Of a DNA stretch of 64,000 nucleotides, positions 18,401-21,400 are shown in pieces. The translations under genes and the position numbers were made by a program. Source of the DNA: Diadema antillarum (taxonomy: Eukaryota); NCBI RefSeq assembly GCF_040938485.1, contig NW_027271922.1, forward strand, positions 310,001 through 374,000, read 5' to 3'. Every line of letters starts with the position of its first letter. The stretch's first letter is position 1. The notes under the pieces are model-generated. The model saw nothing but the letters and a program-made list of their open reading frames with translations, had not been told where the DNA came from and searched no databases.

Positions 18401-21400
18401 TGCTGATGGGCAAAAGATACTGCAATGTTGAATTATTGACAACATTGCCATTTATGTCGATTCTGTGCATAGAAAACATGTTGACTTTGACCATTGATAA
18501 TGTATGATAATATACAATATAATCTAGTTTCCATTCATACAAATGAACTTCTCCACAAAACAAAAAAAAAAAAAATCAACAATACATCACTGTTCACAGG
18601 GAATCCAGCTCTCCTGCTTTGAGGCCATTTTCTCAAAATCTCTTGCTCGCTCCAACTTGAGTTTGAACTTCTCCTGCTCTAGCAGTGTTTCTCCCGCCCA
18701 ACTCAAGTTTTATCAAATAACTAATAGATTTGTTCAAAAATATTAAACTGCTGCAACAAGCCGGCCCCACAAGTGGACGTCGCGTCGCGCTTAGCGCTTT
18801 TGACGATTACTTGTATGCACATGTTTTGTGTTATCACCGCCTCCAGTTTGCTGGAGGTTCCAGGCGGGAGAAAATATTATTGGGGCTATAAAAGGTCTGT
18901 GTGTGACCCTAATATCTTCATCTGTAATTCTCGTAATTACTCTGTGTATGAAACAACCGATGTATAGGAACGATGTACAACAGGTTCATATCATTGCTAA
19001 ACGAGGTCGTCAATCGCCATGCACCGATGCGTAAAAGGATCTCCGTCGATGACAAGTGAAGGCATTCTGGCTATGATTCGTGATAGGGACAAGCTCAAAA
19101 GAAAGGCAAAAAGATCGAAGCTGTCTTCGAATTGGGAAAATTATAAGAAGGTTAGAAAATTTTTTTCCCCCGATGGATCACAACCTTGTCGTGGTCGGAT
19201 GGGCTTGCGTGTCTCAGTGACCCCTAGAGCTATGCCGGCGGGAGACTATTCTCCCGGTAGGGCCACCCAAGCCGGACAGGTCAAAGGGTAGAGACCAGAC
19301 GAATTGTGATCCCTGGCCCTCCAGGTTGGGGGTTGGGCACAGGGTTAACACCCCTGTCCTGTAAAAAGAAATCTGTTACGGAAACAGCAACAAAAGTCAA
19401 AGCAAAAACCAGGCGCAATTTGCCTCCTGGTGTACCAAATGGTACCTGGATGATTGGCGGTGGTCAAAGCCGAAAGGAAGCCACCGACAGCAATATGGGG
19501 GTCATGAACGCCAAATGTAGAACGCGAGTAGGATTCTGGAATGTAAGAACTATGTATGAAACGGGGAAATTAAATCAAATCATTGCAGAAATGCGAAGAT
19601 ACAATATTCAAATTCTAGGTATAAGTGAAAGCAGGTGGACAGGATCAGGAAGTCTACAAACCAGCACAGGAGAGACTGTACTTTACTCGGGAAGAGATGA
19701 TGGACATCACTCAGAGGGAGTCGCCATCATTCTTGAAAAGGGAGTTACGGAAAGTCTTCTTGAGTGGAAGCCTGTGAATAGCAGGATGATGAAGATTAGG
19801 CTCAGGGGGAAACAAATTAACACAACTATTATCCAGTGTTATGCCCCGACTAACGACAACGTCGAGGAGACGAAAGATGCCTTCTATGAGCAACTGCAAC
19901 ATGAGCTTGACAGTGCTCTTGGACATGATATGAAGATTGTGATGGGGGACCTGAATGCCAAGGTTGGAGACAACAACTCAGGCTATGACAGGGCTATGGG
20001 GAGGTATGGATGTGGGGTGATGAATGAAAATGGAGAACGCCTTGTGGAATTCTGCTCTCTCAACAATCTAGTAATTGGAGGGACACTCTTCCAACACAAA
20101 GACATTCACAAGCTGACGTGGTACTCGCCAAATGGCAGGGATAGAAACCAAATTGATCACATCATGATTAATGGTATGTGGAGACGATCGCTTCAAGATG
20201 TTAGAGTCATGAGAGGGGCGGATGCTGCTAGTGACCACCATCTAGTATTAGCAGTGTTTCAAGTGAAGCTTCGGAAAACAGGAGTTAGCAAAGTAAAGCA
20301 ACCAAGATATGACATTGATAAACTTGAGGACCTCAGAATTAGAGGCACATTTGTGTTAGAGCTTAGGAACAGATTTCAGGTCCTAGTAGATCTTGAAGAC
20401 ACACAGGAGGAACAAGATAAGACCAATAAAGAGTGGGAAAGGGTCAAAACGGCCTACCACAAAGCAAGTGAAACATGTCTTGGAACTACAAAGAGAGAGA
20501 GAAAGGAGTGGATGACTGAAGGCACGTGGCAAACTATAGAGAAGCGTAGAGAAGTGAAAAGACAATGCATGGCTGCAAAATCAGACAGGTTAAAAGAAAG
20601 ATCTAGAGTGAGATACAAAGAAATGAACAGATTAGTTAAAAGAAAGTCAAGAGCTGATAAACGAGCCTTTATTGACAATTTAGCTAGTCAGGCAGAAGAG
20701 GCTGCAAAGGCTGGTGAACAAGGGAATGTATATAAGCTGACCAGAATGATTAGCGGCAAGTACAGTAAATCCTCGGAATTACCAATAGAGGACAAGGATG
20801 GAAAGCTTCTTACTACTGAAGCAGAGCAGGATGCCAGATGGGCCGAACACTTTGAAGAAGTCCTCAACAGGCCAACACCAATTACTGAAGCTGATATACA
20901 AGAAGCAGTTTGTGATCTAGATATCGACATATATCCACCAACTCGGGCTGAGATCATTCAGGCAATCAAGTCCTTAAAGAATGGAAAGGCACCAGGATTA
21001 GACAACCTCAATGCTGAGTTATTTAAGACAGACCCAGAATTGGCTGCTGACATACTGCATCCACTTTTCATTGACATATGGGAAGGAAAGAAAGTCCCGG
21101 ACGATTGGTCACAAGGGATCATCATCAAACTCCCTAAGAAAGGCTCACTCCGGAAATGTAGCAACTGGCGGGGAATAACACTTTTGTCTGTTCCGAGTAA
21201 AATACTAGCAAAAGTCATCATTCAGAGGCTGACAAGGGCTGTTGATGAGCAACTGAGACCAGAGCAAGCAGGTTTTCGAAGAGAAAGAGGGTGCGTTGAC
21301 CAGATTTTTGTCTTGCGCAACATAATTGAGCAATGCACAGAATGGCAAAGGCAGCTGTACATTAACTTTGTTGACTTCGAAAAAGCTTTTGACAGTTTAC

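What the first reader, a model, noticed from the sequence alone, without database searches (positions are those of the whole stretch)
19163..19312. Candidate non-canonical HDV-like ribozyme defining the 5' end of the RTE
Seen: directly after the TSD the sequence has the HDV strand order: P1 CCCCCG (19167-72), J1/2 AT, P2 GGATCACA (19175-82), P3 ACC, L3 TTGTCGT, P3' GGT, P1' CGGatGGG, then CT, a ~95-nt branched P4 (GTCTC/GAGAC, CGGGAGA/TCTCCCG), J4/2 C19300-GAA-T and P2' TGTGATCC (19305-12). Known: HDV-like ribozymes process the 5' ends of R2, RTE and other LINEs (Ruminski et al. 2011); the CPEB3 ribozyme has L3 UUCACGU with a single P1.1 pair. Unusual here: P1.1 would be a swapped G-C pair, P1 has a 2-nt bulge, and position +1 is a pyrimidine instead of G. 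From memory BovB has GCC-TTGTCGT-GGC, which would covary with ACC/GGT here. Inference: a variant delta-like ribozyme, or an inactive derivative used for translation initiation.
Basis: partly seen in the sequence, partly recalled or inferred. Interest (0 to 1): 0.75.

Follow-up and report, generated by a model that had tools for sequence, protein, structure and literature searches.

The report
Variant HDV-like ribozyme heading an RTE
The first ~150 bases of an intact RTE jumping gene in this sea-urchin window fold into a hepatitis-delta-type self-cleaving RNA. The same fold, kept by many compensating base changes, heads related RTEs in fish and environmental DNA, but it departs from the textbook core in two places, and this copy's first helix is weakened.

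Summary
An intact 3.29-kb RTE LINE (19163-22452) is flanked by a 12-bp target-site duplication (TSD).

I found the same module at the 5' end of RTE relatives (45-70% protein identity): seven more full copies, one P1-truncated copy and three partial or divergent ones.
- On a plain MAFFT alignment of 8 copies, 93% of cells pair, against 81% when shuffled and at most 47% when slid. 27 of 42 pairs show compensatory changes (0/500 shuffles).
- P1 has a different sequence in every lineage and is a perfect 7-bp helix in six of the seven other full copies.
- The single P1.1 pair covaries (G:C, A:U, C:G).
- The J4/2 C (C19300) and the L3 U...CG are conserved.
- In two fish genomes the TSD abuts the first P1 base exactly.

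The core is non-canonical family-wide: C1-G replaces G1-U, and the P1.1 pair is inverted. No Rfam family matches.

The window copy is the odd one. It has 4 extra T's before P1 and a bulged, weak P1 (-5.4 against -7.6 to -13.4 kcal/mol), so its own activity is doubtful.

Cleavage is untested and no RNA reads were available. HDV-like ribozymes on RTEs are already known (Ruminski 2011). This scan earlier noted one on a different LINE in this genome.

The parts
19151..19162 (+). 5' target-site duplication GTTAGAAAATTT
   Evidence: The identical 12-mer recurs at 22453-22464, directly after the element's 3' end.
19163..19166 (+). Four extra T's between the TSD and P1. They may be untemplated 5'-junction bases. 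By homology register, U19166 may stand in the +1 position.
   Evidence: In relatives L087 and L336 the TSD abuts P1 directly. The A2 alignment puts U19166 in the column of the family's C1.
19167..19172 (+). P1 5' strand (CCCCCG). The predicted cleavage site is immediately 5' of it.
   Evidence: It pairs with 19196-19203. In this helix 6-7 of 7 pairs carry compensatory changes across relatives.
19175..19182 (+). P2 5' strand (GGAUCACA)
   Evidence: It pairs with 19305-19312. 6-7 of 8 pairs carry compensatory changes. Sister subfamilies in Diadema runs show GGAUUGC with GCAAUCC.
19183..19195 (+). P3 (ACC/GGU) enclosing L3 (UUGUCGU). G19188 is the P1.1 partner; U19186 and G19191 correspond to HDV U20 and G25.
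   Evidence: Conserved as UUGNCGU in most copies. P3 variants ACU/AGU and AUC/GGU keep the pairing.
19196..19203 (+). P1 3' strand (CGGAUGGG), carrying a 2-nt AU bulge (19199-19200) unique to this subfamily
   Evidence: All other copies have 7 nt here (alignment column 44 is a gap). A 1-nt deletion variant at 19200 occurs in other Diadema contigs. Duplex energy is -5.4 kcal/mol against -7.6 to -13.4 in relatives.
19204..19204 (+). C of the single P1.1 pair (G19188:C19204)
   Evidence: Pair types are G:C x8, A:U x1 (L009), C:G x1 (L004) and one broken (decayed L082).
19205..19299 (+). P4 domain, about 95 nt and branched. Helices: 19212-15/19291-94, 19222-23/19286-87, 19227-31/19278-82, 19235-39/19271-75, 19241-45/19250-54, 19260-62/19266-68.
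   Evidence: RNAalifold consensus. 93.8-100% of cells pair in these helices on the plain alignment, and 13 of 23 pairs have compensatory changes. The central arm is deleted in L001 and L087 without loss of the core.
19300..19304 (+). J4/2 (CGAAU). C19300 is the predicted general-acid cytosine, the HDV C75 equivalent.
   Evidence: AGAC (19297-19300) and A19303 are invariant in all 8 aligned copies. This matches the C-R-R-A of the standard descriptor (PMC6326823).
19305..19312 (+). P2 3' strand (UGUGAUCC)
19313..19392 (+). Conserved downstream 5'UTR module: two covarying hairpins plus the invariant GUUACGGAAACAG. RTE relatives share it even when they carry other 5' modules.
   Evidence: fold_alignment of 14 sequences gave 15 pairs, 8 of them with compensatory changes. 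It probably corresponds to the conserved mid-5'UTR RTE domain of Kojima 2018 (PMC5786205).
19495..22437 (+). Intact RTE ORF (980 aa from this ATG). The frame is open from 19306, with an earlier in-frame ATG at 19450.
   Evidence: Pfam finds Exo_endo_phos, RVT_1 and DUF6451. Homologues are 45-70% identical.
22438..22452 (+). 15-nt 3'UTR, the end of the element

Best explanation
Window 19167-19312 is one copy of a conserved HDV-like (nested double-pseudoknot) self-cleaving ribozyme. The ribozyme forms the extreme 5' end of a lineage of RTE LINEs found in sea urchins, teleost fish and many environmental assemblies.

Inferred mechanism:
1. The element is transcribed as part of a longer host or read-through transcript.
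2. The ribozyme folds co-transcriptionally.
3. The J4/2 cytosine (C19300) acts as general acid, and the RNA is cut immediately 5' of the first P1 nucleotide.
4. This releases an RTE RNA whose first base is the first base of the ribozyme.
5. Because the whole ribozyme lies downstream of the cut, full-length reverse transcription regenerates it in each new copy.
6. The compact fold probably also shields the uncapped 5'-OH end, handing translation to the conserved structured 5'UTR that follows.

Shown here: the fold, its covariation, the conserved catalytic-core bases, and the match between element 5' ends and the predicted cut site.

Inferred only: cleavage chemistry, co-transcription, end protection and the translation role.

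The family's core is a variant. It has a C1-G closing pair instead of G1-U, and a single inverted P1.1 pair.

The window copy has a bulged, weakened P1 and extra T's at its 5' junction. It may cleave poorly or not at all.
For: 1. Covariation.
- Plain MAFFT alignment of 8 copies: 93.4% of cells paired against 80.6% shuffled and at most 47% slid. 27 of 42 pairs have changes on both sides, against 9.2 expected (0/500 shuffles).
- CM-fitted alignment of 11 copies: 30 of 42 pairs.
- P1 strands all differ yet pair: CCCCCUG/CAGGGGG, CUUCACC/GGUGAAG, CCACCCC/GGGGUGG, CUCCCCG/CGGGGGG, CCCUCUU/AAGAGGG, CCUCUAA/UUAGAGG.
- P2 variants GGAUCAU/AUGAUCC, GGUAUCU/GGAUACC and GGACCAC/GUGGUCC keep pairing.

2. 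Core identities. AGAC with the J4/2 C is invariant. L3 keeps U...CG. J4/2 reads C-R-R-A in 6 of 8 copies. J1/2 is at least 2 nt (descriptor in PMC6326823; spacer need in PMC4908430).

3. 5' ends. In the Prochilodus (L087) and loach (L336) genomes, 12-bp and 11-bp TSDs end exactly one base before P1.

4. Specificity. Family members score 117-171 bits, against at most 24 bits in seeded null loci. Every hit whose adjoining RTE ORF is in view lies just upstream of that ORF.

5. Precedent. HDV-like ribozymes process the 5' ends of RTE, R2, R4 and L1Tc elements (PMC6765202; PMC3774820; PMC5786205).
Against: - No cleavage assay and no RNA 5'-end data. All public runs holding the sequence were DNA-type or unlabelled contigs.
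- The G1-U37 wobble, described as crucial for HDV activity (bioRxiv 2022.09.22.508989), is replaced by C1-G throughout the family.
- P1.1 is a single pair in inverted orientation.
- No Rfam ribozyme model matches the window or any relative, even at a permissive threshold (E<=10 for the window, E<=1 for relatives).
- A TSD abutting P1 could equally reflect a transcription start at that base.
- For this copy: the P1 bulge and 4 extra T's. A loach copy (L337) lacks the P1 5' strand entirely yet has an intact ORF, so P1 is not always inherited.
Confidence: 0.75

Rival explanations
1. The family fold is a genuine ribozyme, but this particular copy is catalytically dead. Its P1 is too weak or mis-registered because of the AU bulge, and the element is a recent 'dead-on-arrival for processing' insertion that still encodes an intact protein.
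For: The P1 duplex is -5.4 kcal/mol against -7.6 to -13.4 in relatives. It is the only copy with 8 nt in P1'. By homology register, +1 would be U19166, with a C-A mismatch plus a bulge. The 5' junction has extra T's. L337 shows that copies with damaged P1 and intact ORFs exist.
Against: Six base pairs remain. All other core elements are intact. Other Diadema contigs align across 19169-19285 without gaps, so the 8-nt P1' may be the norm of a subfamily that has nevertheless spread. HDV-like ribozymes tolerate some P1 imperfection (human CPEB3 closes P1 with a C-A pair).
Confidence: 0.45
2. The structure is a non-catalytic 5'-terminal RNA fold with HDV-like topology, for example an exonuclease-resistant cap substitute, a translation element or a protein-binding site. 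Element 5' ends are then set by transcription initiation at the first P1 base.
For: The canonical G1-U wobble and C-G P1.1 pairs are absent. TSD boundaries do not distinguish a start site from a cut site. [quoted passage not shown]
Against: Conservation falls exactly on the catalytic positions: the J4/2 C with following A's, the L3 U...CG, and a covarying P1.1. RTEs are described as lacking their own promoters (PMC6765202). Closely related RTEs swap the whole 5' module while keeping the downstream UTR, which is what an interchangeable processing cassette would look like.
Confidence: 0.15
3. The match is a chance resemblance, or the conservation comes from an overlapping coding frame.
For: The MFE z-score of the window stretch alone is unremarkable (-1.13). 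In some relatives the main frame stays open through P4 (P0015, P0051).
Against: Crossing helices show 27-30 compensatory pairs. The P1 sequences are unrelated yet complementary. The region is read in different frames in the window and in L336. The model gives no comparable hit elsewhere.
Confidence: 0.02

Closest known systems
HDV-like ribozymes at the 5' ends of non-LTR retrotransposons (RTE, R2, R4/Dong, Baggins, L1Tc; Ruminski et al. 2011, Eickbush & Eickbush 2010/2013, Sanchez-Luque et al. 2011)
   Same: The position at the very first base of the element. The double-pseudoknot strand order. The catalytic C opening J4/2. The 3-bp P3 with a 7-nt L3. The inferred role of freeing the LINE RNA from an upstream co-transcript.
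   Different: C1-G instead of G1-U/Y at the cleavage site. A single P1.1 pair with G in L3 and C in J1/4, the reverse of the canonical C-G. A conserved, roughly 90-nt three-armed P4. No match to any Rfam model. I could not read Ruminski 2011, so I cannot say whether its RTE examples include this type.
Mammalian CPEB3 ribozyme
   Same: A 7-nt L3 starting UU and ending CGU (UUGUCGU against UUCACGU). A single Watson-Crick P1.1 pair beside a U-U. J4/2 CGAA followed by U. No J1.1/4 linker.
   Different: The P1.1 pair is flipped. +1 is C, not G. P4 is about 95 nt rather than a short hairpin. It sits on a LINE 5' end rather than in an intron.
Twister-variant ribozymes at the 5' end of the RTE-clade element Perere-3 in Schistosoma mansoni (PMC8501958)
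   Same: A self-cleaving module at the 5' terminus of an RTE-clade LINE. TSDs lie adjacent to the cut site. The proposed function is the same.
   Different: A different fold and a different cleavage position. In twister the TSD contributes to P1; here the whole ribozyme lies downstream of the cut. No twister model matches.

Membership tests
HDV-like self-cleaving ribozymes | Nested double pseudoknot with strand order P1-J1/2-P2-P3-L3-P3'-P1'-(P1.1)-P4-J4/2-P2' | tested here: met
Covariation supports P1, P2, P3, P1.1 and P4.
HDV-like self-cleaving ribozymes | Catalytic cytosine as the first nucleotide of J4/2, followed by R-R-A | tested here: met
   C19300-GAA. AGAC and the A at +3 are invariant in 8 copies. 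C-R-R-A holds in 6 of 8; L335 has CCAA and L336 has CUAA (descriptor from PMC6326823).
HDV-like self-cleaving ribozymes | L3 with conserved U...C-G (the reverse-wobble U20-G25) | tested here: met
   UUGUCGU in the window and UUGNCGU in most copies. The U at position 1 is kept in every copy with a 7-nt L3. G at position 6 is kept in every full copy, and C at position 5 in all but L337 (UUGAUGU).
HDV-like self-cleaving ribozymes | P1.1 formed by C(s) of L3 with G(s) after P1' (canonical C-G identity) | tested here: not met
   A pair exists and covaries (G:C x8, A:U x1, C:G x1), but in most copies its orientation is inverted and it is a single pair. The interaction is met; the canonical identity is not.
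HDV-like self-cleaving ribozymes | G1-U (or G1-Y) pair at the cleavage site | tested here: not met
   The first P1 pair is C-G in 9 of 11 aligned copies. In the homology register the window has U-G, and L004 has A-U.
HDV-like self-cleaving ribozymes | J1/2 spacer between P1 and P2 (none or 1 nt gives little activity) | tested here: met
   2 nt in the window and most copies, 3-6 nt in L009 and L082. The requirement comes from PMC4908430.
HDV-like self-cleaving ribozymes | Site-specific, divalent-ion-dependent self-scission 5' of P1 | not testable with these tools
   Indirect only: TSDs abut P1 in L087 and L336. No RNA reads were available.
HDV-like self-cleaving ribozymes | Match to a curated Rfam HDV-type model (HDV, CPEB3 and any other HDV-like model held) | tested here: not met
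   No hit at the gathering threshold or at E<=10 in the window, and none at E<=1 in 13 relatives.
RTE-clade LINE | Single ORF with an N-terminal AP-type endonuclease and a reverse transcriptase, about 3.3 kb, a very short 3'UTR and flanking TSDs | tested here: met
   Pfam Exo_endo_phos + RVT_1. The element is 3290 bp with a 15-nt 3'UTR and a 12-bp TSD.
Twister or twister-variant ribozyme (Perere-3 type) | Twister conserved loops and pseudoknots, with cleavage at U-A in L1 | tested here: not met
   No twister family hit at E<=10. The layout differs from the published table (PMC8501958).

The most novel reading that the evidence does not exclude
This is an unrecognised sub-class of HDV-like ribozyme. 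Its active site is built on a C1-G closing pair and a single inverted P1.1 pair, so descriptor searches that fix G1-Y and C-G P1.1 would miss it. It is widespread on RTE LINEs across metazoa. It is also one of several interchangeable 5'-processing cassettes that closely related RTEs swap in front of a common structured 5'UTR. At least two of the other cassettes (the L090/L091 type and the L083/L084/L089 type) match no known ribozyme family and could be new self-cleaving folds.
Probability: 0.35. Interest if true: 0.75.

Novelty: new variant of a known kind. Interest (0 to 1): 0.55.

Why it matters
The G1-U wobble and the C-G P1.1 pairs are treated as near-fixed features of delta-type ribozymes and are hard-wired into the search descriptors. 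If this RNA cleaves, a successful natural lineage works without either feature. Testing it would show how much the metal-binding wobble really matters, and it would widen genome searches for such ribozymes.

For transposon biology, it gives a sequence-level explanation of how a promoter-less RTE lineage in fish and echinoderms defines its 5' end. It also shows that the 5' processing module is exchanged between close relatives while the rest of the 5'UTR stays. Compact self-processing 5' modules of this kind are already used in R2-based gene-insertion templates (PMC13708176).

Tried and rejected
- Rfam at gathering and permissive thresholds on the window and 13 relatives found no ribozyme family.
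- The nested MFE fold of the window stretch is uninformative (z = -1.13) and misses P1.
- Pattern scans of viral contigs and genome contigs with the 16-base core pattern returned only chance matches in phage and bacterial DNA. I reused them as a null set for the model.
- A protein-guided scan of viral contigs gave nothing relevant.
- Public runs: no RNA run and no raw reads, only Logan contigs. These gave subfamily variants but no RNA ends.
- Ruminski 2011 and Webb 2009 are not held in the library, so I could not compare directly with the published RTE ribozymes.
- I could not recover the P1 5' strand of other Diadema copies, so I cannot say whether the bulge belongs to a subfamily master.
- Attempts to fold the L088/L003 5' module (canonical L3 UCCUCGU) into a full HDV-like fold by eye did not give a convincing P1. 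I left it open.

Full report
**What is there**

The window comes from a sea urchin. Half of the ORF is 100% identical to a Diadema antillarum protein, and earlier notes of this scan also name a sea urchin.

Positions 19163-22452 (+) are a complete RTE-clade LINE:
- One open frame of 980 aa from the ATG at 19495. The frame is open from 19306, with an earlier ATG at 19450.
- AP-endonuclease, reverse-transcriptase and DUF6451 domains.
- A 15-nt 3'UTR.
- A 12-bp target-site duplication (TSD), GTTAGAAAATTT, at 19151-19162 and 22453-22464.
- It sits inside an older, decayed LINE ORF.

There is one correction: four T's (19163-19166) separate the TSD from the first C of P1.

**Is it more than a drawing?**

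On its own the stretch is not convincing. Rfam finds nothing, even at E<=10, and the nested MFE fold has z = -1.13. The decisive evidence comes from relatives.

A protein search gave about 1,100 RTE homologues, many on 3.3-4 kb contigs that are whole elements. I fetched their DNA and scanned metagenome contigs. This produced the same 5' module in:
- L001 (JGI metagenome)
- L008 and L009 (metagenome contigs)
- L087 (the fish Prochilodus magdalenae)
- L335 (a Logan assembly)
- L336 and L337 (the loach Paramisgurnus dabryanus)
- decayed or partial copies L082, L040 and L065
- a divergent L004

These appear. Protein identity to the window is only 45-70%.

**Covariation**

P1 is a different sequence in each lineage and is always complementary:
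- CCCCCUG/CAGGGGG
- CUUCACC/GGUGAAG
- CCACCCC/GGGGUGG
- CUCCCCG/CGGGGGG
- CCCUCUU/AAGAGGG
- CCUCUAA/UUAGAGG

P2 changes in step: GGAUCAC/GUGAUCC, GGAUCAU/AUGAUCC, GGUAUCU/GGAUACC, GGACCAC/GUGGUCC. Sister subfamilies in Diadema runs show GGAUUGC with GCAAUCC.

| Measure | Plain MAFFT, 8 copies | Model-fitted, 11 copies |
|---|---|---|
| Cells that pair | 93.4% | 93.6% |
| Same, 3' letters shuffled | 80.6% | 76.3% |
| Same, partners slid | 28-47% | 32-48% |
| Pairs changed on both sides | 27 of 42 (9.2 expected) | 30 of 42 |
| Shuffles reaching any observed measure | 0/500 | 0/500 |

The first alignment was not fitted to any structure, and I wrote the full pseudoknotted structure (P1, P2, P3, P1.1, six P4 helices) on it myself.

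The single P1.1 pair (G19188:C19204) is G:C in eight copies, A:U in L009 and C:G in L004. P3 is ACC/GGU, with AUC/GGU in Prochilodus and ACU/AGU in the termite-gut copy L040 (L082, its decayed relative, has ACU/AGC with one pair broken).

A covariance model built from the eight copies scores family members at 117-171 bits. Among 97 unrelated phage and bacterial loci, all pre-selected to contain the same core pattern, the best score is 24 bits.

**Core identities**

- The AGAC ending in the J4/2 cytosine (C19300) is invariant, as is an A three bases later.
- L3 keeps the U at position 1 and the C-G at positions 5-6. These correspond to U20, C24 and G25 of HDV.
- J1/2 is at least 2 nt.

These are the positions fixed in the standard HDV-like descriptor (PMC6326823) and the spacer shown to be needed (PMC4908430).

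Two descriptor features are not met, and this holds family-wide. The pair at the cleavage site is C1-G rather than G1-U/Y. The P1.1 pair has the opposite orientation and is single. The G1-U wobble is described as important for HDV activity. This is why 'variant' is the right word, and probably why neither Rfam nor descriptor searches pick it up.

**Element ends**

Of the four genomic copies with recognisable TSDs:
- Prochilodus (L087): a 12-bp TSD ends exactly one base before C1 of P1.
- Loach (L336): an 11-bp TSD ends exactly one base before C1 of P1.
- Window copy: four extra T's lie before C1.
- Second loach copy (L337): the TSD abuts J1/2, so the P1 5' strand is missing although the ORF is intact.

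Full-length RNAs of this family therefore begin at the predicted cleavage site. Insertion sometimes adds or loses a few terminal bases.

**The window copy**

It is the only copy whose P1 3' strand has 8 nt, with the extra AU at 19199-19200.

In the homology register (J1/2 = 2 nt), P1 would start at U19166 and hold a C-A mismatch plus a 1-nt bulge. Its duplex energy is -5.4 kcal/mol, against -7.6 to -13.4 in relatives.

Other Diadema contigs cross this region without gaps, and some lack one of the two bases. The bulge may therefore be a subfamily trait. I could not recover their 5' strands. Whether this copy cleaves is open; I put it at roughly even odds.

**Mechanism**

The best-supported reading is the established one for LINE-borne delta-like ribozymes (PMC6765202; PMC3774820):
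1. Read-through transcription.
2. Co-transcriptional folding.
3. Cleavage 5' of P1 by the J4/2 cytosine.
4. A 5'-OH RNA that carries the whole ribozyme and regenerates it on retrotransposition.

Only the fold, the conserved core and the end coincidence are shown here. Chemistry and in vivo processing are inferred. No RNA data were available.

**Context and novelty**

HDV-like ribozymes on RTEs are already reported (Ruminski 2011, cited), so the arrangement is known. I could not read that paper, so I cannot exclude that this type is among its examples.

What appears new is the altered core (C1-G, flipped single P1.1), the large conserved P4, and the breadth of hosts.

This scan had already noted a CPEB3-like HDV ribozyme on a different LINE family in the same genome (s1-232511). 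The present L3 and J4/2 also resemble CPEB3.

**Side observations**

Close RTE relatives carry quite different 5'-terminal modules. All share the roughly 80-nt structured segment that follows the ribozyme. That segment probably corresponds to the conserved mid-5'UTR RTE domain of Kojima 2018.

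Noticed in passing
window 19313-19392; also L001 587-669, L083 580-662, L088 1061-1143, L090 1064-1146 and others: A roughly 80-nt 5'UTR module follows the ribozyme. It has hairpin CCUCC-AGGUU-GGGGG, a second hairpin with loop GCUAACAAC and a strongly covarying stem, an A-rich linker, and the invariant GUUACGGAAACAG. 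RTE relatives share it whatever their 5' module. It is read in different frames in different elements, so the conservation is at the RNA level. [quoted passage not shown] It is a candidate cap-independent translation or RNP-binding element.
   Followed up: partly
L090 about 970-1030 and L091 about 460-520: Two copies with unrelated flanks converge at CCCCCGUGGAGUCCCCGGGGUG...GGACUCC. This forms a P1-like CCCCG/CGGGG helix crossing a P2-like GGAGUCC/GGACUCC helix, but with no P3/L3 between them. There is no Rfam hit. It is an unexplained alternative 5' cassette of a 62%-identical RTE.
   Followed up: no
L083 about 480-600, L084 about 330-470, L085, L089 about 330-450: A third type of RTE 5' module (motifs GGGCAGAUGG..., AGGAGAAGGAAACUCUAGAC) sits on elements 63-68% identical in protein to the window's. 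In L084 it appears tandemly duplicated. There is no Rfam hit and the fold is unknown.
   Followed up: no
L088 about 910-1060 (oyster Saccostrea echinata) and L003 about 850-1010: A fourth module carries a canonical HDV-type core, ACC-UCCUCGU-GGU followed by GACCCUGG. I could not find a convincing P1 5' strand by eye. It may be a classical HDV-like ribozyme with a long J1/2.
   Followed up: partly
L337 912-922 and 4209-4219: A loach RTE copy has an intact 1000-aa ORF, but its 11-bp TSD abuts J1/2, so the P1 5' strand is absent. This shows that short 5' truncations can disable the ribozyme in otherwise intact copies.
   Followed up: yes
window 18960-19162 and 22465 onward: The RTE is inserted into an older, frame-broken LINE-like coding sequence. 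Other Diadema contigs continue this host repeat across the empty site at 19158 (loose ends), consistent with a recent insertion.
   Followed up: partly
window 43026-44375: A tandem array of units about 150 nt long (alternating 145/152 spacing, 8-9 copies), with related single units at 40341-40768 and 42909.
   Followed up: no
window 1067-3268: A cluster of long, near-perfect inverted repeats (arms up to 234 nt, 94-100% complementary), indicating a nested foldback structure.
   Followed up: no
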